Assembly (NCBI RefSeq): GCF_000143415.4
Contig: NW_003314268.1
Coordinates: 139,117 to 203,116, forward strand
Reading direction: 5' to 3'
Origin: Selaginella moellendorffii
Taxonomy: Eukaryota > Plantae > Lycopodiophyta
DNA length: 64,000 nucleotides
Part shown: one piece after another, positions 1,458 to 30,457 of the stretch
How the letters are laid out: each line of letters starts with the position of its first letter
How positions within the stretch are numbered: the first letter of the stretch is position 1
Notes under the pieces: generated by a model
The model's database searches: none
What the model was told of the DNA's origin: nothing
The model's input: the letters and a program-made list of their open reading frames with translations, nothing else
Program-made: the position numbers and the translations under genes

Positions 1458-1542
1458 TGTAGCACATATGATTATGGGATGAGATTTATATATATTGTCA
1501 CCGTGAATCCTTAGAACCTTGGGGGATAAATGGGGATAAAAT

Positions 1543-8989: not shown

Positions 8990-11525
8990 AATGTATCAAG
9001 GTGTAGCAACTATGAGATTAACCAAGAAGAATCAGTCAAAAGAAGACTAGAAATACTAGAAAAGCTTGATGAAGAATGACTACAAGCAATTTAGACACTT
9101 GAAGCCATTCAAATTAAAAGAAAAGCCAACCACAATAAAAAAAGATGACTCAAGAAAAATGAAGAATTCAATATTGGAGATCAAACTCTATGGTTTTGAG
9201 GAAATATAAAGAAAATCAACTCAAAACAAAATCAAGATAAGAAGGTCCATTCCTTATCCAATAATTCAAAGTTTTAGGAATAGTAGTAATTATAACACTT
9301 GATGACAAATATCTCTAAACTGTCAACCTTAACAAGCTCAAGAAATACTGATCGATTGACATCAATTTTATCAATAATGATCTAGGAAAAAATATTACAA
9401 CTTCGAAATTCAAGAATCCAACACTAAAGAAAATCACAAGTATGACACTCAACAATTCAAGAACTTACAATACAAAATTAAGCCTTTAATAAAAAGATAA
9501 ATCAACTTAGGAAATCTCATAAAATCAAGTTCAAAAAATCAAGCTCAAGAACCAAACTCAAGAAATCAACTCAAAGAAAAACTTCAAAGATCAAACATAA
9601 GAAGACAACTCCATAAAGATTCTCAAAAATCAAGTTTGAAAACTCAACTTAAATTTTTTTTTCAAACTCTAAGTTTAACAAATCAAGAAAGATACCACTA
9701 CAATCGATAATCATCACAATCCACTAAGATTCAACAGCAAATGTGCATAAGATCAAGAGAAAACAAGCTCCAACAATAAAACAATATCAAAAAAGAGAAA
9801 CTTCAAGCTAGAGAATCAAACCCAAACCATTTAACACTTAAGTCAAATTTGGAGAAAGGGTGAAATCCATAACCTTAATGCTTTTGGCTACAGTATTGCA
9901 TACTAAGATCGAGAAAATGAAATGGGAAGCAGGCCATGCAAACTCGTGGCATCACCAAGGAGTTCATCTTCAAACCCAAAGTACTCAAAACAATCAAGGT
10001 GAGTCTCCTTTCGCCTTGCAATCCTACATAGCTACATGAAGTCAGGCTTTATAAATGCTCAAAGATCATGGAGAAGCCATACAATATAATGTCACCAAGA
10101 AACTTTTCCTAGCATAGAAGAAAGACTTTGTCCACACCTACGATTACGAGTTTGTCTTGAGTGCCAAGTACTTCGAGTGGGCATTCAAATTTCCCATTAG
10201 TGGAGAGCGAATGACATCAATTCCATGCACGAAAGGGATTCCATTGAAGTGTATCAAGGTACTTGAGAATTACAACAATGGAAATTCTTTGCAAATGAGT
10301 AACATGATTGACAAAGCCAAGCTATGACTCAAGTTTTTGATCTCCATACTAGAGATGCACAAGTATATGACTTCCGTCAGCAAAGCAATCATGATTCTCT
10401 ATGACAACTTGCAGTAGAAGACATAAGTCGACATTGTGAGCTACCTCCATGACAAGCTCATCAAGGAACTCTATATCATGATGATGATGATCCAAAATGG
10501 CCTCAAATATGAAATGCTTGCACTTCCCTACATTGCAGCACTCATCTTGAAGTTCAACATTGCCATTCCACTACAAATCAAAGAGATAGCAATAGATGAT
10601 AGCAACAAAAGACCGAGCAAAGCCACAAACACGAAGACATCACAAACATGAAGAAAAATGGAATGCACTTCAAAAAGATGAGAAGATTTCATCCTCCTCT
10701 ACAATGATGATGAAGATGATGAAGCAAGTGAAGAAAAAGATGAAGAAGAAGAGTTATCACCAACACAAACTCCACTAGCAAAGAGAAAAAGAGCATCAGC
10801 TGAGAAACATTATCCACGCACAAGGCCAAGGCAACATCTACATGTAAGAGCATAAAAGCTGTCAAGGGAACAACCAACAACAAAGATCACAAAGCTCAAG
10901 GCAAGGAAATTTAAGAGAAGACTAGAACAAGACATTGAGCATGTAACCACCTTGCTAGATGATGCCAAGAATGAGATACGTTCAAGAGGTTCCAAACTTA
11001 TAGTCGTCATAACTAGAGGAGTGTAACGTGAACATGAACAGGAGTAGCCTCCAGCATCACTATTGCATGCAGCAACACCAACACAACCAGCTCTTGACAC
11101 CAACATACATGCGCCATCATCGTGAACACCACAGTCAAGAGTGTCTCAAGCAAGGAGCCTGAGCTTCCATATGGTATTTTAAGCTTAGCATTTCTCCAAT
11201 TTATGGATGAAATGCAGTGTCTCTAGCCAACACCACAAATGCTGATACCAATAGATTTTGTGAGGCTTTTTCATGACTAGTAGTGTTTTCATGCTAGATG
11301 GAGTCTAGGCTATAATCAACACCATTGTCTACCAGCCCCTCTACAGGAAGCTCACAAAGATCCAAAGCAACATTTTCCAGCTCAAGAGGAGCATTCAAGG
11401 TATGACTTTCCAAGGATTTGTATGCATAGAGTTTCAATGCATGAATGAGGAACTCTCTAAGGAAAATGCAAAGTTTCACAACAAGATCCAATAGCTCAAG
11501 GTGAAGCAACTATCCATTCTCATGG

Positions 11526-11711
11526 TGTTGGGGCAAGGAGGGGCACCTCCCCAAACGCTTGCTCAAACACGAGAAATGCTTCAATGCTCTTCACAAAAAT
11601 GCCCCCCCTTGCCCTTATGGGGCAAGGGTTTTATACAAGGAAGATGGGGAATATTCCAAGGACCAAAATATTCCCTCTCTCTCTCACTTTCTTGGTGGCC
11701 ACGCCCTAACA
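11526..11711 (-). mobile_element. 3' LTR of nested element B
   Basis: TGTTGGGG...CCCTAACA ends; homologous to 30280-30457; left flank is ATGG. Confidence 0.8.
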
Positions 11712-12195
11712 TGCGACCATGGTGGATTGCATTGGCTCCAGATGTGCAAGAACCTGCCGAAGAGTTTAGAGTGTACCTCTGCTATTGATGCCAAGTGCTA
11801 GTAGCTGCGTGAAATAGTAGAAACTCTAGAAAACAAAGTGGAAAAGAAAGAAAAGAGGTAGGTGTGAAGTTTGGAGAGAGGGAGGAAAACCCGGTGGGAA
11901 ACCCTGTAGTCAAACTGAACTCTGAAGTTTAAGAAAAAGTGCAAAAAAAGTGTGAATAGAGGAGGAAAATAGAGGAAAAAGAGTGAGTACCCAAAGAATT
12001 TAACCTGTACTTAGATTTTGGCTCAGGAAAGTGTAATATGCAAATGCAGCCTCTTGATAACTTCCAGTATGCTCCAAGGATTGGCCAAAATCAATAAAGA
12101 AAGAGAGGTAAAAGAGGGGTGTAGAAATGATGCAAGATGGAGTGATATGGTGGAACGCTGAGATGGTGGTGGCACTCTAAAAAGGTGGCCATCTC

Positions 12196-12327
12196 CGTAG
12201 AATAAGTGCTGACATCTCGGAGTAGCCGGTAACTGGTAATTAGTAACTAGTAACGAGTAACTAGGAACTTGTAACCTGTAACTGGTAACCACCTGCTCTC
12301 GCTCCTACTCCTGCGCCTGTTCCAGCA
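12196..12327. repeat. Dispersed repeat with 7-bp (GGTAACT-like) tandem units, LTR-associated
   Basis: Near-identical to 29402-29531. Confidence 0.8.
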
Positions 12328-13077
12328 CCAATATGGTGGAGTGATATGGTGGAGTGCCGAGATGGTGGTGCCACTCTAAAAAGGTGGCCATTTCTGAAAT
12401 AAGAGTAACTGAAGAAGGTAGCAGCTGAAAAGGACGGTATGGTTGCTGGGTTGCTGATAAAGGGAGGTGGCATGTGTCCACTGAGTGCTGGAGCAAAAGA
12501 AAGTGGCTTCAACTTCTATAGCCTCGCTTAAAGATCCACCTAGGTGCCTTGAGTGAACAGGCTCACCTAGTTGGAAGAAAGTCGCTCCAAAAAAGCTAGT
12601 GCGTCGTCGGCAAATGGTTGTAAGGATATCTCGGAAACAGCACATCCAAATGAGGTGGTGTCTTTTGCTGCTAGTTTACATATGTGTGTTCGTGCTATAG
12701 TGTAAATGTGACCTCAAATGGAGATGTGAATGATGGTGAAAGAATGAAAGATGCAAGACGGGCATCCAAAGATAAATGCAAGCAACACTGCTGGAAGTGA
12801 TTGGTGATGGAACTATGAGTGTAGATGATATGGAATGAGTTAGGGGAATGTGTGGGGTGTAGTAATGGTAAGGGAAGGGCCAAAGAACCTGAAACATAGA
12901 CCGAGCCAAGCAAGGAACCTCCATACAAATGGCAATGCAGCTTGAGCACAAAATCCAAGGCATGGCTATGGTCCAATGGGAAACACTATTTGAAAGTAAG
13001 AAAAGGAGTTATGAAAGTAAAGTGAAAGAAAAGAAGAAAAAGAAAAAGAAAAAGAAAAAGAAAAGAAGAGGAACACC

Positions 13078-15361
13078 TCACCGGATGAAGCGTTTGAGGT
13101 GAAAGTGGTTGTGAGCATGTGGGAGCTCACATCCATCAGCATCAACTAGCACGTATGCTCCACCCCCGATGTGTCATTGGACAAAGTAGGGGCCGGTCTA
13201 GCGAGGGAAGAACTTTGAAGGTGGCATGAACTCTTTGAGTAGAACAAGATTGCCATCCTCGAATGGTTCGGCAGACCGCCAGTGATCAATGACGGACTTG
13301 ATCTTTTGCTTGCCTTGAAGGAGATGTTCAGTCATGGATTGTTGCTGTTCTTCCAAGGTGAGAACCTTCAAGTCACATGCATGAAGCTTGTCCTCATCAC
13401 TAAGCTGCATCGCTGTTGCGTATCGAAGTGAATGTGAGAGCGATGGCACCTAGATCTCCACTAGAAGCACAGGCTCTATCCCATAGACAAGGGAGAATGG
13501 GGTCACGGAGATGGCTGTCTTGAAGGACGTCCGAAAGGCCCACAATGCCATAACCAAGTGCTCGTGCCAATGCTTTGGGTGATCCTTAATAAGCTTTGAG
13601 ATGACTCTTCAATATCCTATTATTGGACTCGGCCTGGCCATTGCACTCAGGATAATAGTTGCTACTCTTCACATGCTTGACCTATAGCCATTGGAGAAGA
13701 TGCTACATGTGAAAAGTTGGCTGGAACTCTTGGATGGTCACAATCCAAGATAAAGTACAAGGACTGTGAATCGGTCTTTGTAAAAGAAAGGTTAGCAAAT
13801 TAAAATAGACATGGAAATAGATATAGGCTCCAGCGAGAAAGTGACGAAATTGCTCCAAGGTGTAAATAACAGCCACTGCTTCTTTTTCCGCATCCACATA
13901 CTTCTTCTCAGTCTCCTTGAACGAATGTGAGGCATAGTATGTTGCATGTGGGGGCTTGCCCAGCTATGAACATTGGCAAAGGCATACTCCAAAAGCCTCT
14001 ATACCTGTTGTGATGTAAATGTCACAAGGAAGTTGTCATTTTGGTGGTTGGAGTACCGGGGCCATGCGAAGTGACTACTTTAGTGATTCAAAGGCTTGTT
14101 GTTGGGATTTACCCCAGAAAAATGGAATTTTGTGTTGTAGCAGAGCTATCAGGGGCCGTGAACGTGTAGCATAGTTATGGAGGAAACGGCGAAAGAAACC
14201 TGTTTGCCTGAGGAAGCTGCGAAATTGCTTCACGTTGGTTGGTGGGTTCTGATCTAGAATCTCTTGAGCCTTGACTAACTAGGGCTTGATCCCATCCTGT
14301 GAGACATCAAAGCCCAGTAGCTGGCCTTCAGTCACCCTGAATTTACACTTTGCCGGGTTCAATGAAAACTTGTGTTGTCGGTAGCGAGTGAAGATCTACT
14401 CCAAGTGCACAAGGTGGTTCTCAAAGGAGTTAGAGGTCATGCACAGATCATCCATATACACCCTTAAGGCACCTCCAATCAAGTCATGAAAGGCGTGGGT
14501 CATAAAGCGCTGAAAAGTAGCTCCGACATTACAAAAGCCAAACGGGAGGACGTTGAAAGCGAAGACACCCCAAAGTATCCGAAAGGCCATAAGATCTCGA
14601 TGATTGGGATGAATGAAGATCTGGTTGTACCCTGAAAAGCCATTTATAAAAGAGTAGTAACGGTGTCCAGCCATCTCATCCACAATTGCATCGATAAATG
14701 GAGTCGAAAAGTGATCTTTCGCAATTGCCTTGTTCAAGTCTCAAAAGTCAATGCAGAGGCAAAGTTTTCCATTTGCCTTGCGTGCAGGGATGAGATTGGC
14801 CACCCACTCTGAGCTCCCCAAAGGGTAAATAAAGCCGTCTGCTAGAAGTCGCTCAATCTCCAACTTCATCTCTGAGTGAGCTGTCGGGCTAAAAAACTGC
14901 ATCTTTTGACAAACTAGTTTGGCTGACTTTGAAAGCATAATACTATGCATGATTGTGTCCATGGGAACTCCTAGAAGCTGGCTGTAGTCCCAAGCAAACA
15001 CGTCCTTGAAACAGTGGAGGAGATCCAAGAGCTTTGCTGCGTTTGTTGAAGCAAGTGATGTGGCAATAAAGACCAGGTCCTTGTCATCACCTAGGAAAAC
15101 AGCATGAACTCTGGAGTCTAGAGAAACTTTAGGCTCAGGGGGCTCATCTATCTTAGATTCCTCCCTGACCTTGGAAACCAAAGAGCAGGGAGTGCCTTTT
15201 GCCTCTCACATCATGGTGATTGCTTATTGTGATAACCTGTTTACCCAAAAGTTTTCTTCATGAGGGACACTTTGAAAAGTCACCTGAGAGAACTCATCCT
15301 TTAGGTTGACTGCCCGCTGCCATAGCTCTTTCAAGTTCTCTTTGCGGACTTGATATTCTGT
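13078..15361 (-). mobile_element. Tat-like Gypsy element C, 3' half: aRH C-terminus, RT, RNase H, integrase (pseudogenised)
   Basis: RT motif RVYMDDLC (ORF 14396-14737); LCLCIDF (14741-15181); RNase H AEKEAVAVI; integrase GQAES and GPYFV; aRH tail EYQVRKENLKELW...VTFQSVPHEENFWVNRLS at 15220-15361. Confidence 0.88.
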
Positions 15362-15538
15362 GGCTGCCGATTCCTTGTACTAAGAGGACCAAACAGAGTC
15401 AGTGTACTCACCGTACTAGCTGAGATCTCTGCCAATGGAAGAAGACAACGGAAGAAAGGCTCCACAACTCTGGGAACTATTGCTGCCACTCGTCTTTGCT
15501 CCATAGTCTCTGGAGCTCTCAGAAGCAAACCACCATAC

Positions 15539-15850
15539 CTACGACGAAATCCTCTCCACCAGCCACGAAAAAGCGTCCCATGCTACCTTTGCCGCCACTA
15601 TCTGTATGATAAGCACCCAGCCAACTCTTACTTTTTCACCAATCCATTCGACTACCAACTCTTCCTCAGCAGGGGTAAAGACTATCGGAATTCCTCTTGT
15701 TTTCGTCTTCGTGCACCCGTACACCCAGTCTGACAGCGAAGTGGCTGGAATTCCCCATTTCCTGCTTGCAGATCCCATTGGCATTCGACTGACTCCATCG
15801 GTGAGCAGCTGCAGGGCACTTATCCTCGTCCGGGCGGGCGACTGTTGCTT
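15539..15850 (-). pseudogene. HTH_psq plus CENP-B/Tc5-type HTH fragment (pogo-like transposase N-terminus)
   Basis: ASRKWGIPATSLSDWVYG...FTPAEEELVVEWI in ORF 15539-16060. No DDE domain follows. Confidence 0.7.
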
Positions 15851-18489
15851 CATATTTCGTTGCGAAAAACTTCTCCTCGAGGCAGTAGAAAGGAGAGATG
15901 CCATGTATCTGCCTTGAGATGGCTCGGTAAGTTTCCCAGACTTTTCCTCCAGACATTTGTACCAATCTTTTCTCACAACTCGTAGTGGCTGACGGATGCG
16001 AGGAGATGAAGCTTGTCGAGGCTGTGAGTTTTCAAAGAAGAAAGGAAACATTTGGAGCAATCCAGTAAAGGGTCTGAAGGTAATGCACGTCCAGTCTTCG
16101 CTTCTTGCCTGTGTGAACTAAGCCTTTCGGTATTGCAGTGCAAGTGAACTGATAATCACACGAGATCGCTGTGTATCTGCAAAAACAAGAACTTGGTAAG
16201 CTTTTCCGTTTGAGGACATTTTTTGAATTCTTAAGAGGTAAAAATTTGTAGGAGCATCCAATCGTGAATCAAGTCAAGGCTTCCATCTGAATTCATGGGC
16301 TTGGAGGTGGAAAAGGAGGCCGGTGGAGTTTCTTACGAAGGCTTGGTGAAAGATGAGGCCACCTGGGACACAGGAAGAGTTTGTTCTGTAGCTTCCTCAA
16401 CTCGACTTGGTAAGCCTTTCTCAACAAGCTCACTCGGCATAATGACTGCAGGAAACCAGCTTGCAGAATTTCCCTTTTACCGTCGTGTAAGACTCCAGTC
16501 GCTTTTTGCGTTGATTTTGACTCATCGATCCACTTGTATCTCACCCACACAACAGCGTACCTGTGGAACAGAATATTTCAGGTAAGATCTTCTGTTTTGA
16601 TTCACAAGTTCATACATTTCACTAATCTTCTGTAGCATCCAGTGATACAGCATTTCTAGCGCATCCATTGATCAGCCGAGACATAGATTGATCCAATTGC
16701 AAACACAGGAACAGGATGAAGCTACCGGAGGACTTCAGACAGGGCAAGCAAATTGAGGGACGGAGTTAGTGTTCTTATGATTTTCAGAAACCGGTTTCAA
16801 AATTTGAATTTCCTCGCCCAGTGTGTTTAAAATCCGACCATGATTATGCTAGAAAACTAGCAAAATCTCTGTTCGGTCTTTAAATGTTGGGAGCGCACTG
16901 ATTGTGATTAGTGACAGTGTAATTTGAATTCTCGCTGTTTAGATTCAACATTGGTATTGATTGAAATTCAGATTCAAGAATTATGGGAAAGGAAATTACA
17001 TAAGATCTGGGAATGTTTGGAACAGAATCAAACCGTGTTTAGCAATAAACCATTTAGGGATTGTTTTGGGTTGCAGGCAGGTTACAATATAAAAGCCCGC
17101 ACGGTAGACTGTGACCTGAAATCTGATCTTATTCACAATCATCAAAAAGAGCCATTCACAAACATCAAAAGATGGTCTTCCTTACGTGACTGCTATGAAT
17201 CCCAGAGCTTCATGAATGAATAAAAAACCTAATGTGGCCTCAATGAATTCAGAAATTTTTGTGACAGATAAAAAGTATTCCAAAAAGTATACCTGTCTCT
17301 AAGTTAGTTTTCATTTAATGATGTCTTTTGTTATAAGTAACCTGTTTATACTTTTTAGGTGAAACAGAAAAGCCCTTTGTTTTAGAGACATTAAACAGGT
17401 GTTTATAGACAAAACATAAGATAAAAATTACTAGAATACAAATACCACAAAACTAATATTAATTAATTCATGTTAATCAATCAATCAATTTAAATTATAA
17501 CCGTAAACCCATTTGAGATTGTTTATTCGTATATTTGAGACAACAATGGGACCGTACTCATTCTTTGCCATCTACAAACGATTACGCGCCCAGCTACTTG
17601 CACCCTGGAAACTCTGTTTTTGACATTTAACTCCTTTAAACCATGACAGTTAACCAGCTCCAGATTCATGGGGTTAAACACGTTGCCAAAGCACGGTAAG
17701 ATGCACGTTTGGCTCAGCAACAAGATTCTTTGTGGAAGCACCCAAGAGCTGAGGATTGTACCAGGTTGATTACACACTGGCATGGGTGTATATTAGTGGG
17801 ATTAAGCACCTGACGTGAACTTGTTTGTTTTGCTTGGATGGTTTACGTCAATCATCTGTCAATCCCGGCTCTTACACATTCAAACTTGATGGGCCTTGTG
17901 TGTTTAAGCCAATCATGGCCAAGTTCATGTTGGACGTCTTGCCCAGCGAATCAAGCCTCCCAACTTAAAAAGGAACTTGTGATTTCTTGTCAAGTGTTTA
18001 TTTCTCCGCTGGTTTGCTGGATTTGAAGATCAGTGCTGGTCATTTTGAAAGCTGCACTGGAGTAATGCAAGATATTCGTATCTAAATACCTAAAGATCCC
18101 AAGCTCTCACCACAGATCTAGATGATAAGCAGCGCTGGCCTGGATATACGTGCCACCTACCCGTCCATCCACACCAAACTCACAAACACGTCTCAAAAAA
18201 TAGTCAGTACTTTCGTTGTCAAGTTATGTTTAGCTGTAAAATATCTAGAGAATCGAATATAGACGTACCCGTACCATAGTCATCTCTTGGTTTGGGACCA
18301 GTGTACCATCGGGCATGTCGCGACTCGAGTCTGTGACATATGGTGACATATATCAGATATGCGAGCCTTTGGCTGTGAGCGTATATCAATATATGTGGCG
18401 CACAGCCTTCGCTTGGGCCCAGTGTCACTACAGCCAAACTAACGACTATAAAACCCACTTTGTATTCGTTTCTCTGCAGATCCAAGAAA

Positions 18490-21051
18490 ATGTTTCGCCT
18501 TGTTCTCATCACTCTTCTTCTGCTCTTCCTAGTCGCAAGAAGTGCCGAGCAGCAGGATGGTCTGGTTCGAACCATCAGCAGTGGCGGGGACAAAGTGACG
18601 GTGGACTTGAAGCCCTTCTCAATCCGCAGTCCCAACTTTGGCGTGCTAGTGCAGAATGACACTGGCAGCTTTCTCTCATACGACAACATCCCGCCTTCTC
18701 GTACGTACCTGGGTTCAGTAAGAGACCACCCCGGTGCCATGGCCACGGCCTTGCTCAACGTCAACGGAACTCTGCTTTGTCGAATCAGCTTCGAGAACGG
18801 GGTGGAGTGGAGCAGCACCGGAGGCGAGGCCTCGGTGAGGGGAACCACGGGTTGGAACTCGAATCCCCGGTGGCCAACCAGCCTCGTTCCTGCTTCCAAA
18901 TCCGACGCTGTACTCTTCGTAGCGGAAGTCGGAGTGGATGCTACTTACTTGTACTACCTTTCAACAGGTTCTAGCGTCGAGAACACAGTGAACATGGCAG
19001 AGTTCTCCATCCTGTCTGCGAATATGCCCTTCCTCCGAGATGCTTCCATTCTTCACACGATTGGGAAAGTGGTGATCCGTGCAAGTCAGTCCCAAGATCC
19101 ATATGGAAACCCCAAGACCGGAGTCCTGCTCGACAGGGTGGAGAAACAATGGAGAGGTGCCATTGCTTCCGTGGTAGGCAACACTCACAAGCTCTGCTTG
19201 GTTGCCCATCCTCGGGCTAACGGAGGCTTGGCATGGGTAGCAACGGCGGCTAAGCCGGTGGGATACTCGGCCATCAGTGCTACTGCAAACGGAGATTTCA
19301 CGGTCATCTGGCGGCACGAGGCTGGTCACAACTGGGGATCTAGCCACTACGAAGGTGGTGGACGGCCCGAGGGACCGACTATCATGTCCGACAACCAGCT
19401 CTCCCGTTTCTCGTCTTCCGAGCTTGCCAAGATCCTGCGCTACAAGTCTGGTGTTCCTCGCCTTGCAAGCAACATTACGGTTGCCCGTCCACCCCGTGCG
19501 AATATGGATGCGATCGACATCCCGCAGAATTGCACCTGTTGCACTTGCTTCAAGAGCCTGGACGTTCTGGCCAACGATCTGGATGCCGACGTCAAATCAC
19601 TCACGATCGCCTCGGTCCAGTCTCCTTCGGCTTTGGGCAGTGCCACTAGCATCTCAAACTCTAGCTGGAACCAGATTACTTACACGCCGTCTTTGGCAGC
19701 AGGATTGTTTCTCGACCATCTCAAGTACACTATCCAGAATTCCCTCTTGAGAAGCTCCACAGGATACGTAACCCTCCGTCCCGCTGCTCTCCTGGGCTGG
19801 TGGAAGATGGATGAGGCGAGCGGCTCGAAAGTGCAAGATTCGTCTGGGCATGCAGCGAATGGGGTACTCAAAGGAGGATCCTGGAACAACGGCAATGGGC
19901 TTTCCTTTGGAGGTGCAGGGACGGTGTCACTCGGCGCAAGTCCCTCCATCAGAGGCAAGACATCCTTCTCCATCGCCTTGTGGATATATGTTACCAGTAC
20001 TTCAGAACAAGTCATCATCCAGCAAAGGAGTCCACCGAGCAGCATCACAAGTGGCTCCGACGGAGGATATCAGCTCAGTCTGTTTGAAGGCAAGCCCCGG
20101 TTCTGGGTGTTTTCGGACTCCGGAGATCAATTCAGATTCTCTGCCTCAGCTGCCATCAACGACGGTGGATGGCACCACATCGTAGCCGTTCGTGATCAGG
20201 CCGAGGGCCAGATCTACATTGATGGCAAGCTATCGGCCTCTGCAAGCGGCGACATCAAGTATTTGGATGTAACTATCCCCGTGTTCATGGGTGCTGATGC
20301 GCGCGACAACACCTCATTCCTCACGGGTTCCTTGATGGGGGCAAAGATCTACAGCCGAGCTCTAGAACAGGAAGAGATCGGGTATCTCAGCACCTGGCCA
20401 GAAGCTCTCGTGGCATGGTGGAAGCTGGATGACAAGAGTGGAGTCTCTGCAAAGGATTCGTCCTGGAACGGAGCAACCGGGAGCATCGAGGGATCAACGA
20501 CGTGGAATCCCGACGGCGGACTTACCTTCGACGGCGCTGGCAAGGTGGTGCTAGGAACAAAACCCTCTCTGTCTGGCAAGACATCCTTCTCCATCCATGC
20601 GTGGGTGAAGGTGCCACCAAGTGCTGGTAAAATTTCACGAGCGATCATCATCCAGCAAAGGAGCCCGCAAAGCAGCACAACAAACGGTTTCAATGGCGAA
20701 TACTTGCTCTACTTGGTCCATGGCAAGCCTCACTTCTTTGTGTATGGGAATTCTGCGACTCAGTTCGACTTCTCTGCGTCTTCTGCCATCAACGACGGCG
20801 AGTGGCACCACATTGTGGCCGTGCGTGATAACGGTGTGGGGCGGATCTACATTGATGGCGAGCTGTCAGCTTCTAAAAGTGGCACTGTGGTGAGGAGCTT
20901 GGATGCATCTATCCCTGTGTTTCTGGGTTGGGATTCTCGCTCGGGCAATTCCTTCTTCACAGGTTCCTTGAAAGGTGTCAAGATTTATAACCAGGCTGTG
21001 GCACCCAACTTTGAGGCCGAGCGTAACACCATGCTCCTGGCATCAGCATAA
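18490..21051 (+). CDS. Secreted M12/reprolysin-like zinc metallopeptidase with Big_9/cadherin-like domain and two Laminin-G (ConA-like) domains; intronless, 853 aa from ATG 18490
   Basis: Signal peptide MFRLVLITLLLLFLVARSA; metzincin motif HEAGHNWGSSH (19315-19347) with Met-turn TIMS; LDVLANDLDAD..LTIASV Big_9 motif; two LamG repeats (WWKMDE/WWKLDD, DGGWHHIVAVRD/DGEWHHIVAVRD, IYIDG). Confidence 0.9.
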   Translation: MFRLVLITLLLLFLVARSAEQQDGLVRTISSGGDKVTVDLKPFSIRSPNFGVLVQNDTGSFLSYDNIPPSRTYLGSVRDHPGAMATALLNVNGTLLCRISFENGVEWSSTGGEASVRGTTGWNSNPRWPTSLVPASKSDAVLFVAEVGVDATYLYYLSTGSSVENTVNMAEFSILSANMPFLRDASILHTIGKVVIRASQSQDPYGNPKTGVLLDRVEKQWRGAIASVVGNTHKLCLVAHPRANGGLAWVATAAKPVGYSAISATANGDFTVIWRHEAGHNWGSSHYEGGGRPEGPTIMSDNQLSRFSSSELAKILRYKSGVPRLASNITVARPPRANMDAIDIPQNCTCCTCFKSLDVLANDLDADVKSLTIASVQSPSALGSATSISNSSWNQITYTPSLAAGLFLDHLKYTIQNSLLRSSTGYVTLRPAALLGWWKMDEASGSKVQDSSGHAANGVLKGGSWNNGNGLSFGGAGTVSLGASPSIRGKTSFSIALWIYVTSTSEQVIIQQRSPPSSITSGSDGGYQLSLFEGKPRFWVFSDSGDQFRFSASAAINDGGWHHIVAVRDQAEGQIYIDGKLSASASGDIKYLDVTIPVFMGADARDNTSFLTGSLMGAKIYSRALEQEEIGYLSTWPEALVAWWKLDDKSGVSAKDSSWNGATGSIEGSTTWNPDGGLTFDGAGKVVLGTKPSLSGKTSFSIHAWVKVPPSAGKISRAIIIQQRSPQSSTTNGFNGEYLLYLVHGKPHFFVYGNSATQFDFSASSAINDGEWHHIVAVRDNGVGRIYIDGELSASKSGTVVRSLDASIPVFLGWDSRSGNSFFTGSLKGVKIYNQAVAPNFEAERNTMLLASA

Positions 21052-22206
21052 ATACCATATATATGCTATGTATTGTGATATATTTTGAATATATATTAAA
21101 TGTATTGAATATTAAATATATCTAATAAATACTATATTATTTATATTTTATCATTCCTTCCAAAGGAACAGGAATTCACCCGCAATTTTTGATGCTTTTC
21201 ACCTCAGCGAAACACCATGTAATTTGCTTGTTCAAATGTATGAGAGCAAAGATTCGACAGAATCCGAGGTCCAAGCAATGCAGGTTTAGAGATTACTTCC
21301 CAAACGGCAAACGACTACTCTAGGTAAGTCAAATTTGAATTTTGACAAAAAAATTCACGAGCTGAATGACCCACTGGAGTCTCAGTAAGCGGATGTGATC
21401 GGTTCAAGCAGGAAGAATATCCCTCAAACAACGTGCAATTATTTTAAAAAATTATATAAAATGTCTTCTACTTTAGGGTTCTTCAGTGAAAATGCGCTCA
21501 AGATCTGGCTGGAAGGCTTCTGCAATGAATTGGTACGTATCCAATAATCGTTGGATTCGTCCGGTTCTTTTCTGATCATTTTTCTTCGTTTTTGGTACAG
21601 TTCAAGGTGGATTGAGTGAGAGCTCATAAATGCGAGTTCCTCTTCTGTTCAATCATACAAGGTTGTGATCAGGATGAACTGGACACCGACTAGATGCGCA
21701 AGTCTAAGGGTTCTAGTCGCCTACTGCTTCGTCCACATACCACGAATCAGGTGTGAACTAGATTTAGTTTGTAAATTGTGGATGAAGGTTTCGGAAATAC
21801 TTTGCTACAGTAGTAAATCAGGTTTCTCAAGTTGGTCACACTGGACTAATTGGAGGAAGTGTTCCTCTGTTTGATGAGGTAATTGGATATCTTTTAATTT
21901 TCCAAGAATGTTGCAATTTGATATATAATCAAGCAGATTATACTGAATCTCGATGCCATGAACTCAACCCTTTGCTTTTGATGAGGTAAACCTTCTTCGT
22001 TCTTTAGTTTTTTGTTATTAGTTGATCTTCAGTCACTCATAATAGATCAGTATTGTCATCCATTGCCTACTGTAAATGAACTGTTCTATCTCCTCATCGA
22101 GATCACAAAGGTGCAGACGAAAGCTCACGCAATTCATTACAGCAGAAGCCCTAAATCCGTAAATAATCAGCACTTGGTTTTTTTCTGATAAGCTTTCCCT
22201 TACTAG

Positions 22207-22282
22207 GTGCAATTGATGAAGAACATGAAGAAGCTCTTGGATCCTAAAGGCATTCTCAACCCTTACAACGTTCTTGCGTAAT
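22207..22282 (+). pseudogene. Isolated last exon of an FAD-linked oxidase (D-2-hydroxyglutarate dehydrogenase-like)
   Basis: After an AG acceptor: VQLMKNMKKLLDPKGILNPYNVLA*, the FAD-oxidase C-terminal DPxGILNP motif. The rest of the gene is not evident. Confidence 0.65.
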
Positions 22283-22917
22283 AGTCGGGAACTTTCAGAC
22301 AAATCTTCGACAAACTCTGAAAATACATTTTTCTAAAAATCGATTTAGAAACAAGCTCAAATTGTCCTGAATGTTACTTAAAAAACATTTAAGTTTTTGG
22401 TCGCACCAAAATGGCGGCAGGATTTTTCCGGCCGCACCAGCTGTGCAACAGGAAAAATCCTGCCACACCTTCTAGCATCGACTTGGTGAGCGCATTCAGT
22501 GCCTTTTTGGCCGCACTCTTCTCCACCAGAATGAGAGGAGACATTCTTGATTGTTGATCCATAGCTGAAGACTGCTCACTAATTCCTCAACTCACCTGGA
22601 TGATCGATCGACGCCTCCTCTAAGCGCGAATACAAATGCACAGGCTTCTAAAATTAGGGCCTACTTAATAATGATTTATGTCAGAAAATCGCTTGCCCTA
22701 ATACCCTGTATTTTCTATACTTGGAATAATCTCCAAATAATTATGTCACCAGGTAGGAATAAACCTATCCCCAGGTTCGAATCCTGGCAACCCCCTAATT
22801 TTTTGTTTTAGTTTAGTTTAGCTGACTTGCATACTAAAATACGCTTTAAAATCGTATAGTTTATCAATATTAATTTAGGGCAAGAGGCATGAAATTTTGA
22901 CTTTGGTTTTAAGTTAA

Positions 22918-23002
22918 GGTACTTGGCTGCTATGACGGCGTCCCTGTGAGTCTTAGAGCTGATAAAAGACTCACAAGGACGCCGTCATAGCAGCCAAGTA
23001 CC
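22918..23002. repeat. Near-perfect inverted repeat (37-bp arms, 11-nt loop)
   Basis: GGTACTTGGCTGCTATGACGGCGTCCCTGTGAGTCTT and its reverse complement at 22966-23002, one mismatch. Confidence 0.95.
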
Positions 23003-23760
23003 CATTCCAGTTCATCTGGCTGGTAAGGTATACTAAGCAGCAGAGCTTCAGCATCTCTCAAAGAACTCGCCCGCCCTAACAAATCGATCATGCAGCAATA
23101 ATGTAGGCTTCAGCCCGTGATCAAACATCAGACTCACAAAGCAAGACCTACCAGCCTCCAGCTTCCCGATCCGGCCAAAGACAACAGAAAACATGTCTCA
23201 TCCGGCAACTTGCTAAAGGTTTCCATGGCGTGCCTGGGATACCCGTTCTGGGCATACCCAGCCAGCATTGTGTTCCAAGAAGCAATGCCTTTCCGGGTCA
23301 TCTGCAGCTGAAATGCCGATGCTTGAGTCATATCTCCGACTTGGACATAAGTGGCCAGCATTGCCGTCCACGACACAGAGCTCCACTCGGGCATCATTTC
23401 AAAGACGCGCTCCGATCCTTTGAGATCTCTACAGAAGCAGAACACACGAAATACGTCCCGCTGAGGCATCACACCGAAAATCTGACTAGCCTCGTCTGCG
23501 TGACCGTTCCGGGCATACAACATTAGCATCGAGTTCCACGACACCAGATCCCGCTGCGGGGATTCCTCGAACACCGCCATCGCCTCCTCCACGCAATTCA
23601 TCATCCTGGTGTTCTACGCGGAAAGCATGACATTCCACGAAACCAGATCCCTCACCGGCAATTCGAAACGAAACATCTGTCTGTGGCTCTGTCCAGATGC
23701 CCATTCCGGGCATATCCAGAAAGCATCCAGGCGGCCAGGTTCCAGTTTGCCGCGAACTCT
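23003..23760 (-). pseudogene. PLS-class pentatricopeptide repeat protein pseudogene/fragment
   Basis: PQRDLVSWNSMLMLYARNGHADEA, SWTAMLATY, SWNTMLAGYAQNG and TYCCMIDLLGRA motifs; frameshifts and deletions. Confidence 0.85.
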
Positions 23761-23769
23761 CTACTCGGC

Positions 23770-24681
23770 CGTCGTTGTCAGGCGGAGCAGTTAAACTGGG
23801 AACGTAGGCAACGTTCCATACGGACTCTTCTCGGTTCACGTTCCAACGAGGGACGTGCAAATGCCAAGCACGAGTGTCCAGATTGAAGGCCACCGGTCGG
23901 TCCAACAAGTGGAGAAAGAGCATGTTGTTAGCCCGTTTGCAAGGAAGCAGGTGATGGGGCTCCACGTTCCTGCACAAGCCTCTCACATCGATGCTGGACA
24001 CAATCGTCCACTCCAGCTGCTGCTCATCAGCTTCTTCATCAGCCGCCTCCACGATGACCATCCACTTTGGAGCGAAGCAAGGCCTTGCGAAGGGCACACC
24101 ACCAGCGTGTTTCCCCACAACCACAATGCCTGCTGCCATCAGCTTGGACCGGTGGTCCAGCCTGCCATACACCGATCCCGCATCATCCGAACCTCCTTCC
24201 GGCGGCAGTGGGGGCAACGACTTGAAATGCCAAAACGCCCATGCGTCCCTTGCCCGGCTGTAGCCACTGATTGTGTAGCCCAAACTCACTGAGTCGCAAC
24301 AGGAGGCGTATTGCGCGTATTGCACGTCCACCTGAAAAAACACCCGGTAATTCGTGGTGGTTCTGGTTCGTGGGGCACCTGCCATCCTCATCGGACACCC
24401 AAAGAGACACCGACACATAGCCCAACACGACTAAGTCGCAGGAGCCGCAGGACAGCAAAAACTTCTCCTGCAACCGTCTTGGGCAACCGCTTCAAGGCGC
24501 CAGTCATGGGGTTCATGACTGAAAACCAACTTGCATCATTGGACGTGACAATTCCTGCTGACATATCGAATAAAGACAATAATGCGTCAGGACAAGGGAG
24601 AGGCATGATATCTTTGTTGTGTTCACTCTTTTTAAGCAAGAAGGGTTGGGGGTAAGCTGCCGAAGCAAGAGAAGGATTCAT
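23770..24681 (-). pseudogene. F-box-associated/kelch-like protein fragment
   Basis: FSVMNPMTGALKRLP, WHFKSLPPLP, VAFNLDTRAW and VAYVPSL resemble plant F-box C-terminal regions; the frame changes between ORFs 24388-24681 and 23486-24418. Confidence 0.55.
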
Positions 24682-26180
24682 AGCTGAGGTATGCCTGTCT
24701 TGATGCGTTTACACATATCATCATCTAACTGCTGGACTATGCCCAGACTGAAGTAGAAGAAGACCAACGAAAAAGAAGGAACGAAGAAGGGCCAACGTGA
24801 GGCTGAAAATATGACTGTGGAAGCATACACAGCATTAGTGCTGGCTTTCATTAAGCATCATGTCCTTCCAGGCCAAATAACAAAATTACCTCATCTCTTT
24901 GATCGCGAGCAGTCCTGCTTTGCAACAGGAGCTTGTGTCTTTCCAGCCACCATCTTTTGCAGCCCACTCCCTGCTCTTGCATGTCCCACACCATGGCCTG
25001 TAACTTCTTTGCCATGATCAGCCAAAGTGACTAGTCAATGTTGCAGATGAGTTTCTACCTGAACGTGCATGGAGATGACCATTGCATTGAAGATTCAGTC
25101 CTGAATCCTCTAAGTCATCCCTGGCAGCCAGTGTCCACTCGCATGCTCTTCCACGGCCATCAGTTGATCACGGGTGGTCATCTGAACTTGTTCCAATCCA
25201 TCTTTTTCTTCATTCACAATCACTACTGAGTCATCTGAAGCTCGTTTGCACTGATGTCTTTGCACTTCCCTGGCTCTCTACCTTTGGCAGTCTGGTATAA
25301 GGAGTTAAGAATACAACTCCATAAAGCAAATAACTTTACCGTCCATGTTCACGTTTGTCGTTGTAGTTCACACCCCATGACTTTTTTGAAGTCGACTGGA
25401 TCGCACATCGCTCCCGGTCGTCAACTTTCAAGGAAGCTGGACGTTGCCAATCGCTCGCGAGATTGGGATCGACAACGTGATCGCTGAAGCACAGCCCAGC
25501 GTCAAAGCCGATAGAGCTGGTCTGTCTCAACATCCTCCTCTTCAACAATGGGACAGTGAACAGGGTTGTCGTGCGGTGCTGCTCTCTGGACGCAGAAACT
25601 CCCAAGGCATCACCTGACCAGCAGAGATTTCATTTGGCCGCCTTTGATCTACCTTCGGATTTTTCCTGCATCTGAGGTGTCCACATTAGAAAGAAGAGAA
25701 AGATCAGACAAGCAAAACCATGAAGTTTAGGGTATACAGCCTGGCAGGCGCAGGTAATTTCATGACTTCATACACATCCATACTCCCCTCCGCCACCTTT
25801 GGAATTCCTGCCTGAACCGTTGCTTTCACGTAGAATTGGAAAGCAGTCAAAACGCTCCATAAGGATGTTGTTGTAACCCTCGTACTTCTTCCAGTTTGTT
25901 TGGCTTGGGTTTATGTAGGACTTCGTACTTGTCAACCGAAATCCAATGTCGGGTACCGTACATAGATATTTAAGTTCTGATTTGAGAAGAGGGAGGGGAG
26001 GGTTCAGAAACTGAAACCCAAGCGCATCAATTTCCGTTCCACATCTTACTCACAGTCCTCCAACAAATGCAGGACACGACCTCGATCTCGTACTCTATTC
26101 TCGTCGGACGACGCCCACACATTCCACAGTTGATCTCGATGCTTTGTCTGGACAATTCCTACAAATGCCATCAAAGAGTA

Positions 26181-29100
26181 AATAAGTTGGTGTATGATGA
26201 GTTGCACATCTCCAACGAAAGTGACTTGCCTAAACTTGAGATCTGTGGCCAACTTCATGGCACTAATAGCCACAAGTACTCTGTTTCATTAGCTGATGTT
26301 GCTGGCAAAGTAATAGAGAGGTCAGCTACTTTGTTCTCCGCAGAATCAATCATCTAAACTCCAATGCCGGCAACTTGGTTTTTGGGGTAGAAAGCACCGT
26401 CAAAATAAGCTGTAATCATAGGAGTGTCCTCTTCTTCAAATAAAGGACACCACATCTGGCAAGACCGTCTTTGGCAAGTCTAGCAAGAACATTGCTGTTG
26501 GATCTGGAGTCTTTGTCTGTTGTTCTCTTTGCTTCTAATGCTCTAAGCGCTCAATTTCCAATGCAAAGACTATGGCCAAGTATTCTGCAAGTGGAGGAAG
26601 TTCCTCCACTGAAGTCAAGTCCAAGTTTGGTGCTAAAGTTTCAGTGTAATACACTTGGATTTGTACCGGGAGCTCCATGGTAGGAAATTTTGAACTCAAA
26701 GAGCTATAACTCGCATGTAGCACGTTCAATTGACTTGATTCTTTCTACCAGTTGTGTGTCTGGATGTCATCTTCTGTCTCCAAGGAACAGCATGGCAAAA
26801 TACGCTTAGAGTCATTTTAGTAGGAAGATGCTGGCTGTGTGACACCTCAGACAATTGCTGAGGAGGATTGAGTTCGGCTGTGTCTTGTGAAAGATGGACT
26901 TGTTCTGGAGTGATTGTGTCCTCAAGCTCCATAAGAGAGAGTTGGTCCCATACAAGAAACAAATTGAGAAGCCCTTCCTTTGTCAAGAAACACTCCGAAA
27001 AGCTGGATATAGGAGTCTGTACCCTATAAGCCCCACCATCGAATAAAGAGGGCATGGCTAAAGGCTTGGCCTTACTCTCAAATAAAGAGAGTGAGGCTAT
27101 TTGACTCACCTCTAGCAACATCGATTGCATTGCATGAGAAAGCATTCGTCATATAGATGGTCGACTCCACCGCCAACTCAAGAAAAACCTCTGTGAGCTC
27201 AAGAGGAAAGTGTGGTGTGAAGGCCATCTTAGTCTGAGCCTGCTGGGCTTGCTGAGAAAAAACTCTGCTGTGGTTGTTGAGAAAGGTGGCGCTATGGGTT
27301 CCATCGCTAATTTCCATCTTGCCTTATGTGCTGTTAATGATGCAATGGGCTGTGACTTGCCATGAGCGGCCAAGGATGATAGAGTCCTTCAAAAAGGACA
27401 TTCCAAAATGTTGGTAGTCAACCATGAGGAAATTTACCTCAGAACTAACACCCTGCACTAAGACTTTGACACCACAGCAAATGCCTGTTGGAGGAATAGT
27501 GTGGTTGGCGAAGGTCTTGAGCACGATGGAGGAGCTCTCAGTGATCTGTAGCTGTGATGAGAGGGCAGCTTCAAGAGAGATAATGTTGCTTCTAGAACCA
27601 GAGTCAACCAAAGCATCCATCCTACAAGAGGAAGTACCAATCTGCACCAGGACGAAGAATGGACCAGGATCCCCACCATATTTTGTCATGTCGACAATGT
27701 GCACCTCTTGAGGAGTCCTCTTGAGAGTGCTCTTTGGTGTTCCTGACCTTGCAAACTCCTCTAAATGCTGGCCAAATCTTGGGATAAGACTCAACATGTT
27801 TTGGAGCGAAAAGGTGACAGGAGTGTCAACCAGCTATTGAAGAACCATCTCTAGAATAGGAATAGATGTTGATGAGATCTCAGGGGGAGAAGAGAGTAGT
27901 GACTTGAAGGGGAGCTTACAAGCCACCCTCTATGTCATTGGATTTGGTGCTGACAAAGATTCACTCTCAATCGACATTGGGGGATCGATGCCGGGCTGAG
28001 CGGCTGCCTTCTTCTTCACTTGGGCTTGAGTGGCTGCGGTTTGCTGCTGTTGCCTATAGAGATCCTCGGCTACCAAAATCGTGTTGACTGATGAGGCTGG
28101 TGCCTTGCCTTTGCGTGACGAAGGGGCTGCCTCAATTGCTTGTCGCTCCAACTGCTCCTGATATGTCTCTGGACTCTGAGATGATGTGGAATTATCAGTG
28201 AAGGGATGTTGTTGGACACGTTGAGAAGATGGAAGCTGAAGCTTTGGGTGAAGCTTGAAGTAGTGCTGCGTGTTGTGTGTGTTTGTCTCGCAGTGAGTGC
28301 ACCAACGGGACTTAAATCTATATTCCTGAGCTATAGCAGCCTCTTTCCTGGACTCCACTAGCTCTTGGAGCAATTTGTCATGGTGTGATTGCTGCTGAAG
28401 AATGATCTCCTTCGGCTGCCGCATCTCGTTGGCAAAGTTTTCAATAGCCAGAGGTGTATACTCAATAGCGACAGGCTTTGGTGTGGACAGGCGAATAGCT
28501 GCACAAGGTGACTCTGACGGGGTGATAGCTTGGTCAAAATCAACTTTAGCGATCCCCAGGTTGACAAGGAGCTCTCTTTCCAGCTTTGTGGCTAACGAAA
28601 ATGCCTCGCGACAAGACTTGAATGTCTTCTTAAGAAGTTTCTGCTACAAGTTCCCCCGCAGAACTGCTGTGAATGCCGTGATCCCCTGTTGCTCATCTTG
28701 GACCACTCTACGATCCTAACACTGCTTCCAGTATGCTCAAAATTGAGTGATATAGTTAGGAACAGACTTGTGAGCACCCTTTCGGAACGAAAAGAGGTCA
28801 ACAATTGTGGGTTTTTCTTCAACGAAACGTTCTTTGAAAGAAGCAAGTAGTGTCTGGAAGTCTGTCCGGTCCTCTAGGAGGAGAGAATCTGCCCAAGTTC
28901 CTACTTTGCCTTCGAGAGACTGCAAAAAGTCATGGCACATACAATCATCATCGACGATCATGTTTGTCGTGCAATAGTAATCAAAGCGACTGATATGCAA
29001 TGTTGGAGAGATTGTTCCAACACCTGAGAAGGTCGGCAAATCACTCCTCTTTTGCAAAAGATGGAGTTGAGGTCAAACTAAAGGTGGCTACACCATAGTT

Positions 29101-29230
29101 CGTAGATCTAAGTCACTAGAATCTGCTGAGGATGAAGAGGACTCGGCCCGAGAAGGTGTTGTGTCATACCTAAACTACCTTTGAATATTAGAAAGTTTAC
29201 TCCGTACCTTAGGGCCTTGAGGTATGGTAA
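26181..29230 (-). mobile_element. Tat-like Gypsy element C, 5' half: gag, zinc knuckle, protease, archaeal-type RNase H N-terminus
   Basis: Gag ORF 28737-29057 (LPTFSG...FLQSLEG..W); WCTHCETNTH knuckle; protease ALVDSGS (27324-27797); aRH ITAYFDGAF at about 26395-26420 and VGDVQLIIHQL ending at about 26184. Confidence 0.85.
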
Positions 29231-29531
29231 AAGGGTGCCAATTTGTTGCACGTCTAGTTTGTACCAGCATTAAATACCCTAAACACTACAAATGCCTGGT
29301 CAAGGCAACTGGGTTGACAGGAACAAGAAGACTATAAGCTAGCGCTCAAGTTGCTCAAAGTTGCCCAAAATGCCTGTGATGAGCACATATAACCGTTGGC
29401 CTGTAGAGTAAGTGCTGACCTCTCAGAGTAGCTGGTAATTGGTAACCAGTAACTAGTAACCAGTAACTAGGAACCTGTAACCTGTAACCGGTAACCCCTT
29501 CCTCTCGCTCCTACTCCCGCATATTCCAACA
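29231..29531 (-). mobile_element. PBS and probable 5' LTR of element C
   Basis: On the - strand, ...TGCAACA followed by AAT TGGCACCCTT (PBS-like); TGTTG...CAACA ends at 29244-29531; shares the 7-bp repeat block with 12196-12327. Confidence 0.55.
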
Positions 29532-30259
29532 CTGACTCCTAACTTTACGCCAACTCCTGTTCCTGTTCCTACGCCTGCTCCTGCTCCTTGAAGATTGCTT
29601 CGTTCTCAAGGAACCCCCAACAAAGTTTAGCCCAAAAGAGAAAAATGAGTCCTCTGGTCTCGATCCTTCCCCATTTTAACTGTTGGTGGGCTCGTTGGAA
29701 AGGGCTTAGCCCCATCTACAATATTCCCCAAAATCCAAGAATATTGTGGAAAAACATTTGCATGTCACTGATGTAAATTAATAATAAGACACCATTGGTA
29801 TTTTCGGAAAACCTAGGACCAGGAGCACCTCTAGAGACAAGCAGCATCCAAAACAAAGCCCGAAGAGGCACAAATTCCTACTACAAAAATGACCCAATCT
29901 AGCTGGAGAAGAAAATCCTTCTACATGCTACCAATTTGGCCAAATCTAGCACCAAGAATCAACTCGTAGATTTAGGCCAGATTTATAAGCCCAAATGCAT
30001 TACTTTAAGAAATTGGGCCAAGGATCTAGGCGAGAAAGTGAAAACCCTAAATTGTTCCTCAAACTAAGCTAAGAAACGTTGTATCTCTTTAAATACAACA
30101 CCGCTTGATGAGTGCCATACCTTGCTAGAAAGAGGAGCTTCAAACTTATCTAGCACACCCAAGATTAAACAAAACCACCGTAAGACGAACAAGAAATTCC
30201 TTCCCAAATTCTGCAGCCAAAAGAGAAAGAGAGAAATAATGTCTCCGAAAGTGCTGCGC

Positions 30260-30457
30260 GTCACGCCGGATTCACCATTTGTTGGGGGAAGGAGGGGCAC
30301 CTCCCCCAACGCTCGCTCAAACACGAGAAATGCTTCAATACTCTTCACAAAAATGCCCCCCCTTGCCCCTGTGGGGCAAGGGTTTTATACAAGGAAGATG
30401 GGGAATATTCTAAGGACTAGAATATTCCCTCTCTCTCTCGATGGCCACGCCCTAATA
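30260..30457 (-). mobile_element. 5' LTR (30280-30457) and PBS of nested element B
   Basis: Homolog of 11526-11711; PBS-like TGGTGAATCCGGCG 2 nt inside the LTR; right flank ATGG matches the left flank of 11526. Confidence 0.8.

What the first reader, a model, noticed from the sequence alone, without database searches (positions are those of the whole stretch)
15362..26180. ~10.8-kb cargo block inserted almost exactly within the archaeal-type RNase H of a Tat-like retroelement
Seen: on the - strand the aRH stops after VGDVQLIIHQLI (26181) and resumes as TEYQVRKENLKELW...VPHEEN (15361). Joining the halves restores a normal aRH and the order gag-PR-aRH-RT-RH-INT. The block between them mixes unrelated pieces: pogo-like HTH, the intact metallopeptidase, a lone FAD-oxidase exon, PPR and F-box fragments. 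I could find no TSD or TIR. Inference: a gene-capturing vehicle (Helitron-like or break-repair filler) moved the peptidase gene here, which would be a route for spreading a foreign gene.
Basis: partly seen in the sequence, partly recalled or inferred. Interest (0 to 1): 0.75.

Follow-up and report, generated by a model that had tools for sequence, protein, structure and literature searches.

The report
Gene block inserted into dead retrotransposon
A 10.8-kb piece of spikemoss DNA carrying a bacterial-type protease gene sits, cut in cleanly at one codon boundary, inside an old dead retrotransposon; most of it is one of five near-identical copies in the genome, so the once-foreign gene is being duplicated and moved by ordinary plant genome processes.

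Summary
A degraded Tat-type LTR retrotransposon lies on the minus strand at 11526-30457. It has 178/186-bp LTRs (94% identical) and a 4-bp ATGG target duplication. Its extra RNase H is split exactly between codons at 26181 and 15361: in four reference polyproteins the two halves abut with no residue missing or repeated.

The 10,819-bp block between them has no target duplication, microhomology, terminal inverted repeats, terminal hairpin or Helitron ends.

The window is Selaginella moellendorffii v1. Its peptidase is SELMODRAFT_407389. Four more copies (96.5-99.4% amino-acid identity) lie in pairs on two other scaffolds, each beside a copy of the same F-box-derived gene. Their gene models map onto the window from 17668 to 26158, which is 22 bp from the right junction. 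So at least 8.5 kb of the block is a multi-copy unit. The left ~1.3-2.3 kb has no annotated paralogue.

My best reading (about 0.5) is a duplicated genomic segment patched into a double-strand break. A non-canonical Helitron-like vehicle is the main rival (about 0.2). This is a new example of a known kind, of moderate interest. The scan had already noted the protease copies on other pieces.

The parts
11526..11711 (-). 3' LTR of the host Tat-like retrotransposon (186 bp, TG...CA)
   Evidence: It aligns to 30280-30457 with 10 mismatches and one 8-bp gap.
30280..30457 (-). 5' LTR of the host element (178 bp, TG...TA). A TGG-initiated PBS-like stretch follows 2 nt inside it on the minus strand.
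11522..11525 (.). Target-site duplication ATGG, left copy. The right copy is at 30458-30461.
   Evidence: Read directly from the sequence.
27933..29072 (-). gag region of the host element
   Evidence: Retrotrans_gag, E=4e-5, on 28740-29057.
27327..27833 (-). Aspartic protease region
   Evidence: Weak Asp_protease_2 / RVP_2 matches.
26181..26479 (-). First two thirds of the additional (archaeal-type) RNase H. It carries one stop and one frameshift and ends at codon ...QLI.
   Evidence: RVT_3 positions 49-77; piecewise matches to four reference RNase H domains.
15227..15361 (-). Last third of the same RNase H, starting TEYQV...
   Evidence: It abuts the upstream piece with zero gap in P0140, P0115, P0133 and P0193.
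14078..15205 (-). Reverse transcriptase
   Evidence: RVT_1, E=5e-12. It is 86% identical to S. moellendorffii XP_024537841 (P0064).
13706..13963 (-). Native RT-linked RNase H
   Evidence: RT_RNaseH, E=3.4e-10.
13201..13681 (-). Integrase remnant. Only the C-terminal part of the core is left; the N-terminal part is deleted.
   Evidence: Read from the frames. It has a tblastn match to the integrase region of the other gypsy element in the window. No Pfam hit.
15362..26180 (.). The inserted block, 10,819 bp, with blunt junctions on both sides.
15542..16668 (-). It is part of the left piece that has no paralogue.
   Evidence: The word search found only the model itself. It has no Pfam, PDB or Atlas match. 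Mapped.
17668..26158 (.). Minimum extent of the multi-copy unit shared with the copies on the 399,968-bp and 1,451,693-bp scaffolds.
   Evidence: tblastn of paralogue gene models P0215 (exon 1 at 17668) and P0221 (exon 2 at 26158-26051, 97%) onto the window.
18490..21051 (+). Intact secreted M12-type metallopeptidase with Big_9 and two LamG domains (SELMODRAFT_407389). The annotated 5' exon is at 17643-17696.
   Evidence: Pfam. It is 100% identical to P0217. All non-Selaginella relatives are bacterial, at 30-46% identity.
21828..22281 (+). Remnant of a D-2-hydroxyglutarate dehydrogenase / FAD-oxidase gene. One FAD-binding-domain exon and the last exon lie only ~330 bp apart.
   Evidence: FAD-oxidase_C positions 228-248, E=1.8e-6. 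The only PDB hit is 6LPN residues 83-101, E=0.017.
22933..23613 (-). Truncated PPR gene fragment, with a 37-nt inverted repeat (22918-23002) in its tail.
   Evidence: PPR, E=2e-24; inverted repeat I1. The tail was read by eye.
23489..25533 (-). F-box-derived gene or pseudogene (model SELMODRAFT_407391). The core ORF is 23489-24430 and the F-box motif itself is missing here.
   Evidence: Five paralogues, P0218-P0222; P0222 carries PF00646.

Best explanation
**Shown.**
- A Tat-type (aRH-before-RT) LTR retrotransposon inserted once at this site and decayed.
- Later, 10.8 kb of DNA was placed into its extra RNase H, exactly between two codons. No host base was lost or duplicated.
- The right-hand 8.5 kb or more of that DNA is one copy of a repeated genomic unit: the bacterial-derived metallopeptidase gene, a D2HGDH remnant, a PPR fragment and an F-box-derived gene. 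The unit also occurs as two pairs on two other scaffolds.

**Inferred.**
- A double-strand break in the dead element was repaired by end joining or synthesis-dependent patching.
- The repair used a copy of that unit, plus a second unrelated piece of ~1.3-2.3 kb at the left end, as filler.
- The event was therefore duplicative gene movement without a transposon. It carried a working-looking copy of a once-foreign gene to a new locus.
For: **One host element.** It has an LTR pair at 94% identity, TG..CA ends and an ATGG duplication on both outer flanks.

**Exact split.** The two RNase H pieces map to adjacent residues in four references.

**Blunt junctions.** There is no TSD, no shared base, no TIR above the shuffle level, no terminal hairpin (z -0.7 to +0.2), no poly-A, and no assembly gap.

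**Multi-copy unit.**
- There are five peptidase proteins at 96.5-99.4% identity on three scaffolds.
- There are five F-box-like paralogues on the same three scaffolds.
- Their exons map from 17668 to 26158 of the window.
- The five copies form one clade, and the window copy is sister to B_430418.

**Different context elsewhere.** The first 25 residues of P0221, encoded upstream of the unit's right end in its own copy, match nothing in the 64-kb window.

**Composite make-up.** The left model, 407388, has no paralogue.

**Precedent.** Gene movement by break-repair filler is an established process in plants (Wicker et al. 2010, as summarised in PMC3445842).
Against: - No donor-recipient DNA alignment could be made, so I do not know whether homology in the other copies stops at the block's ends or runs past them.
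- Repair by synthesis-dependent annealing usually leaves microhomology. End joining often leaves small deletions. Neither is present here.
- 10.8 kb is large for filler.
- The unit's mosaic of gene fragments, its lack of TSD and its copy number are also what a gene-capturing Helitron would give.
- The absence of a paralogue for the left piece rests on annotation only.
Confidence: 0.5

Rival explanations
1. The unit is a non-autonomous, non-canonical Helitron-like or otherwise undescribed TSD-less transposon. It captured the peptidase, F-box, PPR and D2HGDH pieces and transposed into the retroelement.
For: - There is no TSD.
- There are five copies, including two local pairs.
- The content is a mosaic of gene fragments from unrelated genes.
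- Homology to another copy runs to within 22 bp of the right junction.
- That copy's upstream exon is absent from the window.
- Helitrons with non-canonical ends are known (PMC5148889).
Against: - There is no 5'-TC or CTRR-3' on either strand.
- The insertion lies between T and A, not A and T.
- There is no 3' hairpin and no asymmetric TIR.
- There is no Rep/Hel ORF in the block.
- The left end lies in or just after a helix-rich ORF region (gene model 407388) that has no paralogue, not at a recognisable terminus.
Confidence: 0.2
2. The cargo entered a Tat element earlier or elsewhere, and the composite spread afterwards. It spread either by retrotransposition in trans, as a ~19-kb element, or by segmental duplication of retroelement plus cargo. 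In that case the retroelement is part of the repeated unit.
For: - Tat/Ogre-type elements can be very large (my own knowledge).
- The element here has both LTRs and a TSD.
- LTR divergence (~5.6%) and divergence between copies cannot be ordered firmly without DNA.
Against: - The upstream exon of P0221 has no counterpart anywhere in the window, including 26181-30457.
- Only one close relative of the RT piece turned up, at 86% identity, on a fourth scaffold.
- The copies differ by only ~0.6-3.5% at the protein level, against ~5.6% between the LTRs.
Confidence: 0.1
3. The block built up in several steps inside the retroelement: one TSD-less event, followed by further insertions and deletions. The present junctions would then not be the two ends of one inserted molecule.
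For: - The make-up is composite: a left piece without paralogues and a multi-copy right part.
- An AT-rich tract lies at about 17200-17600, between the two parts.
Against: - The outer junctions restore the host reading frame exactly.
- Later deletions reaching either junction are therefore excluded.
- No internal TSDs, LTRs or TIRs were found in the block.
Confidence: 0.12
4. The structure is an assembly artefact: a chimeric join in the v1 Sanger assembly.
For: The v1 assembly mixes two haplotypes (my own knowledge), and the unit is repeated.
Against: - The window has no N gaps.
- A misjoin would not give two junctions that complement each other to the codon.
- The annotated models 407388, 407389 and 407391 lie on one scaffold in this order.
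Confidence: 0.03

Closest known systems
Gene movement by double-strand-break repair with filler DNA in plants (Wicker, Buchmann & Keller 2010, Genome Res; summarised in PMC3445842)
   Same: A multi-kb non-TE segment holding a gene plus gene and TE fragments is copied to a non-collinear site. It has no TIRs and no transposon-type TSD, and a donor-like copy exists elsewhere in the genome.
   Different: The junctions here are perfectly blunt, with no microhomology and no loss. The target is the coding region of a dead retroelement. The donor's limits are unmapped. The cargo gene is of bacterial ancestry.
Helitron gene capture (canonical Helitron1; non-canonical Helitron2, PMC5148889)
   Same: No TSD, a mosaic of captured gene fragments, several copies, and local pairs that could come from rolling-circle read-through.
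   Different: Every terminal hallmark tested is absent: TC/CTRR ends, an A|T target, a 3' hairpin, asymmetric TIRs and Rep/Hel.
Tat LTR retrotransposons, structure #2 (aRH upstream of RT), known from clubmosses and gymnosperms (PMC10508981)
   Same: The host element has gag-PR-aRH-RT-RH-INT in one direction and comes from a Selaginella genome.
   Different: This copy is dead: it has stops, frameshifts and an integrase deletion. Its LTRs are unusually short (~180 bp). It was not placed in the published Tat clusters.

Membership tests
Tat LTR retrotransposon, structure #2 | Two LTRs with TG..CA ends and a target-site duplication | tested here: met
   The LTRs are 11526-11711 and 30280-30457 (94% identity), with ATGG on both flanks.
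Tat LTR retrotransposon, structure #2 | Additional RNase H placed between PR and RT, with a native RH after RT | tested here: met
   Order.
Tat LTR retrotransposon, structure #2 | The additional RH belongs to the archaeal-like RNase HI clade, and the RT groups with Tat | not tested
   No phylogeny was made. The only evidence is a weak RVT_3 match and alignment to the post-RT additional RH of other plant polyproteins.
Helitron (canonical) | 5'-TC and CTRR-3' termini | tested here: not met
   The block ends read GGCTG...GAGTA on the plus strand and TACTC...CAGCC on the minus strand.
Helitron (canonical) | Insertion between host A and T, with no TSD | tested here: not met
   There is no TSD, but the host site is ...ATT|ACA..., that is, T|A on both strands.
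Helitron (canonical) | Hairpin 10-12 nt from the 3' end | tested here: not met
   The terminal 70 nt on both ends and both strands fold no better than shuffles.
Helitron2 / non-canonical Helitron | Asymmetric terminal inverted repeat and terminal hairpins | tested here: not met
   The best inverted match between the first and last 150 nt is a 7-mer, which is the typical value for shuffles.
Break-repair filler / duplicative gene movement | The insert lacks TE termini and a TSD, and a related copy exists elsewhere | tested here: met
   four other copies
Break-repair filler / duplicative gene movement | Donor homology runs past the ends of the insert, i.e. the insert is an arbitrary sub-segment | not testable with these tools
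Break-repair filler / duplicative gene movement | Microhomology or small deletions at the junctions | tested here: not met
   Both junctions are blunt and no codon is lost.
pogo / Tc1-mariner transposon | TA duplication, TIRs, and HTH plus DDE transposase domains | tested here: not met
   There is no TA duplication or TIR. The ORF has no Pfam, PDB or Atlas match. The fold model was too poor to use, at pLDDT 52.

The most novel reading that the evidence does not exclude
The 8.5-10.8-kb unit is a previously undescribed kind of lycophyte mobile element. It leaves no target duplication, has no inverted repeats or Helitron termini, and has picked up and is amplifying a bacterial-derived secreted protease gene together with host gene fragments.
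Probability: 0.12. Interest if true: 0.7.

Novelty: new member of a known kind. Interest (0 to 1): 0.4.

Why it matters
This is a dated, nucleotide-exact example of how a gene of bacterial ancestry, once inside a plant genome, is copied to new loci. The split retroelement gives an unambiguous 'before' state. The copy here is therefore certainly derived, and the junctions can be read without a second genome.

If the other copies turn out to share exact ends, the locus would instead define a new TSD-less mobile element in lycophytes. Otherwise it extends break-repair gene movement, so far described mainly in grasses, to a spikemoss.

Tried and rejected
I could not fetch DNA of the other four copies or of the allelic haplotype, so I made no empty-site or end-of-homology test.
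- **Rfam and tRNA scans** of the window found nothing.
- **The left ORF (15542-16117)** gave no answer in any test: Pfam at E<=1 and E<=5, the Atlas, PDB, and a single-sequence AlphaFold model at pLDDT 52, too poor for a fold search.
- **The word search on that ORF** found only the window's own gene model.
- **The big HMMER search with the RT piece** gave one close relative, at 86%. The rest were at or below ~40% identity, so no intact family member close enough for a nucleotide-level junction comparison was available.
- **Literature search for the locus tags** found nothing. Wicker et al. 2010 is not held in the library.
I re-ran it by reference.
- **No joined or spliced protein was sent to any database search.** I searched the RNase H halves separately. 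The read-through, with X at the stop and at the frameshift, was aligned only locally from the window file.
- **Mechanisms rejected from the junction sequence:** pogo/mariner (TA), PIF/Harbinger (TTA), hAT, CACTA, MULE and LINE/retrocopy insertion.
Full report
**Source of the window.** The window is from Selaginella moellendorffii. The 853-codon ORF at 18490-21051 is 100% identical to SELMODRAFT_407389 (P0217), which lies on a 3,908,038-bp v1 scaffold. Earlier notes of the scan had already named the species.

**The host element.**
- On the minus strand I read gag (Retrotrans_gag), an aspartic protease (weak), an RNase H-like stretch at 26479-26181, RT (RVT_1 E=5e-12), the native RT-linked RNase H (E=3.4e-10) and the tail of an integrase.
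- Two short direct repeats, 11526-11711 and 30280-30457, differ by 10 mismatches and one 8-bp gap. They begin with TG and end with CA or TA, and ATGG flanks both on the outside.
- A TGG-initiated stretch lies 2 nt inside the right repeat on the minus strand, where a primer-binding site should be. I saw no clear polypurine tract.
- This is one LTR retrotransposon, inserted once. Its layout is Tat 'structure #2', which is published for clubmosses (PMC10508981).
- It is dead. The extra RNase H has a stop and a frameshift, RT and gag are in pieces, and most of the integrase core is missing.

**The split.**
- The Pfam RVT_3 match of piece 26049-26285(-) ends exactly at the Ile whose codon ends at 26181, profile position 77 of 123.
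- I then searched the two RNase H pieces separately against those 150 proteins. In P0140, P0115, P0133 and P0193 the piece ending ...QLI and the piece starting TEY... fall on directly adjacent residues.
- A local alignment shows no gap at the junction. So no codon of the host was lost or repeated.
- At the nucleotide level the host reads ...ATT|ACA.... The block starts TACTC and ends CAGCC on the minus strand. No base is shared across either junction, so there is no TSD and no microhomology.
- The window has no N gaps.

**What the block contains (15362-26180, 10,819 bp).**
- A helix-rich ORF, gene model 407388 at 15542-16668 (-). I could not tie it to any family.
- The peptidase gene (+), with GC 0.54 against 0.40-0.44 around it.
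- Two remnants of a D-2-hydroxyglutarate dehydrogenase gene, only ~330 bp apart.
- A truncated PPR gene (-).
- An F-box-derived gene (-). Its paralogue P0222 still has the F-box.
- No LTR pair, no TIR, no terminal hairpin, no Helitron ends and no Rep/Hel ORF.

**The new result: the block is largely a repeated unit.**
- The 90% cluster of the peptidase holds five S. moellendorffii proteins. One is the window's own. Two lie on a 399,968-bp scaffold (430418, 448687) and two on a 1,451,693-bp scaffold (421556, 445106). Identities are 96.5-99.4%.
- The 314-codon F-box-like ORF has five homologues on exactly the same three scaffolds, with locus tags next to those of the peptidases.
- Mapping all these models back on the window by tblastn shows shared sequence from 17668 (first exon of P0215) to 26158 (second exon of P0221, 35 of 36 residues identical). 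That is 22 bp from the right junction.
- Downstream exons of P0001 also match 21161-22125, so the D2HGDH remnant is shared.
- The five peptidases form one clade among bacterial (mostly Verrucomicrobiota) relatives. The window copy is sister to 430418.
- The first 25 residues of P0221, encoded upstream of the unit's right end in that copy, match nothing in the whole window. That suggests that copy does not sit in the same retroelement context.
- The left model 407388 has no paralogue at all in the word search. The left 1.3-2.3 kb may therefore be a separate piece, but this rests on annotation only.

**Mechanism.**
- A clean, TSD-less insertion that is composite and that duplicates a segment present elsewhere is what repair of a double-strand break with captured or copied DNA produces. 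The process is established for plant gene movement (Wicker et al. 2010, as described in PMC3445842). I put this first at about 0.5.
- The perfectly blunt junctions fit direct end joining of a free fragment better than synthesis-dependent annealing.
- The main rival is a non-canonical Helitron-like vehicle, at about 0.2. It would explain the copy number, the captured fragments and the missing TSD. However, every terminal feature listed for Helitron1 and Helitron2 (PMC5148889) was tested and not met.
- Spread of a cargo-bearing composite retroelement (0.1), stepwise build-up (0.12) and misassembly (0.03) are less likely, for the reasons given under the rivals.

**Timing, rough only.** The LTRs differ by about 5.6%. 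The unit copies differ by 0.6-3.5% at the protein level in the peptidase, and by about 1-1.5% in the core of the F-box-like ORF. This agrees with the unit arriving after the retroelement. Without DNA of the other copies I cannot turn it into dates or a dN/dS value.

**Limits.**
- The decisive comparison, where homology between the five copies ends, could not be made. Nor could the search for an empty site.
- It also stays open whether the 399,968-bp scaffold is the other haplotype of this locus or a different locus.

**Verdict.** This is a new, well-resolved example of a known process, made more interesting by its bacterial-derived cargo.

Noticed in passing
window 12197-12328 and 29403-29532: A second pair of direct repeats (86-88% identical) lies inside the host element, in its 3' and 5' untranslated regions. 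Each contains a (GTAACYA)n microsatellite. A 58-nt duplication also flanks the left copy (12138-12195 / 12337-12394). The order of these repeats relative to the LTRs is not that of an LTR.
   Followed up: partly
window 22918-23002: A near-perfect hairpin (37-nt arms, 97% complementary, 11-nt loop) sits inside the tail of the PPR fragment. A second hairpin at 22416-22464 is followed 7 nt later by CTAG.
   Followed up: no
window 6500-8100 (+): RT and integrase pieces of a different Ty3/gypsy element, 31-36% identical to the host element at the protein level.
   Followed up: no
window 1541-1738 vs 5552-5749 and 6049-6241: 198-nt inverted repeats (85-86% complementary), with the right arm duplicated 496 bp apart. 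These may be the ends of a ~4-kb DNA transposon.
   Followed up: no
window 53700-64000: A ~5.4-5.9-kb tandem duplication, 84-98% identical. It probably belongs with the tandem gene array that another finding of the scan describes starting 2.5 kb beyond the window's end; I did not check this.
   Followed up: no
window 18490-21051 and proteins P0001, P0214-P0217: All five peptidase copies keep the full 853-codon frame and the HExxHxxGxxH motif. The neighbouring F-box, PPR and D2HGDH pieces are fragmentary. This hints at purifying selection on the peptidase.
   Followed up: partly
window 18440-18460 and 21120-21135: A TATAAA-like motif lies about 35-40 bp upstream of the peptidase ATG, and an AATAAA about 75 bp after its stop. 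These are eukaryote-style signals around a bacterial-type gene.
   Followed up: no
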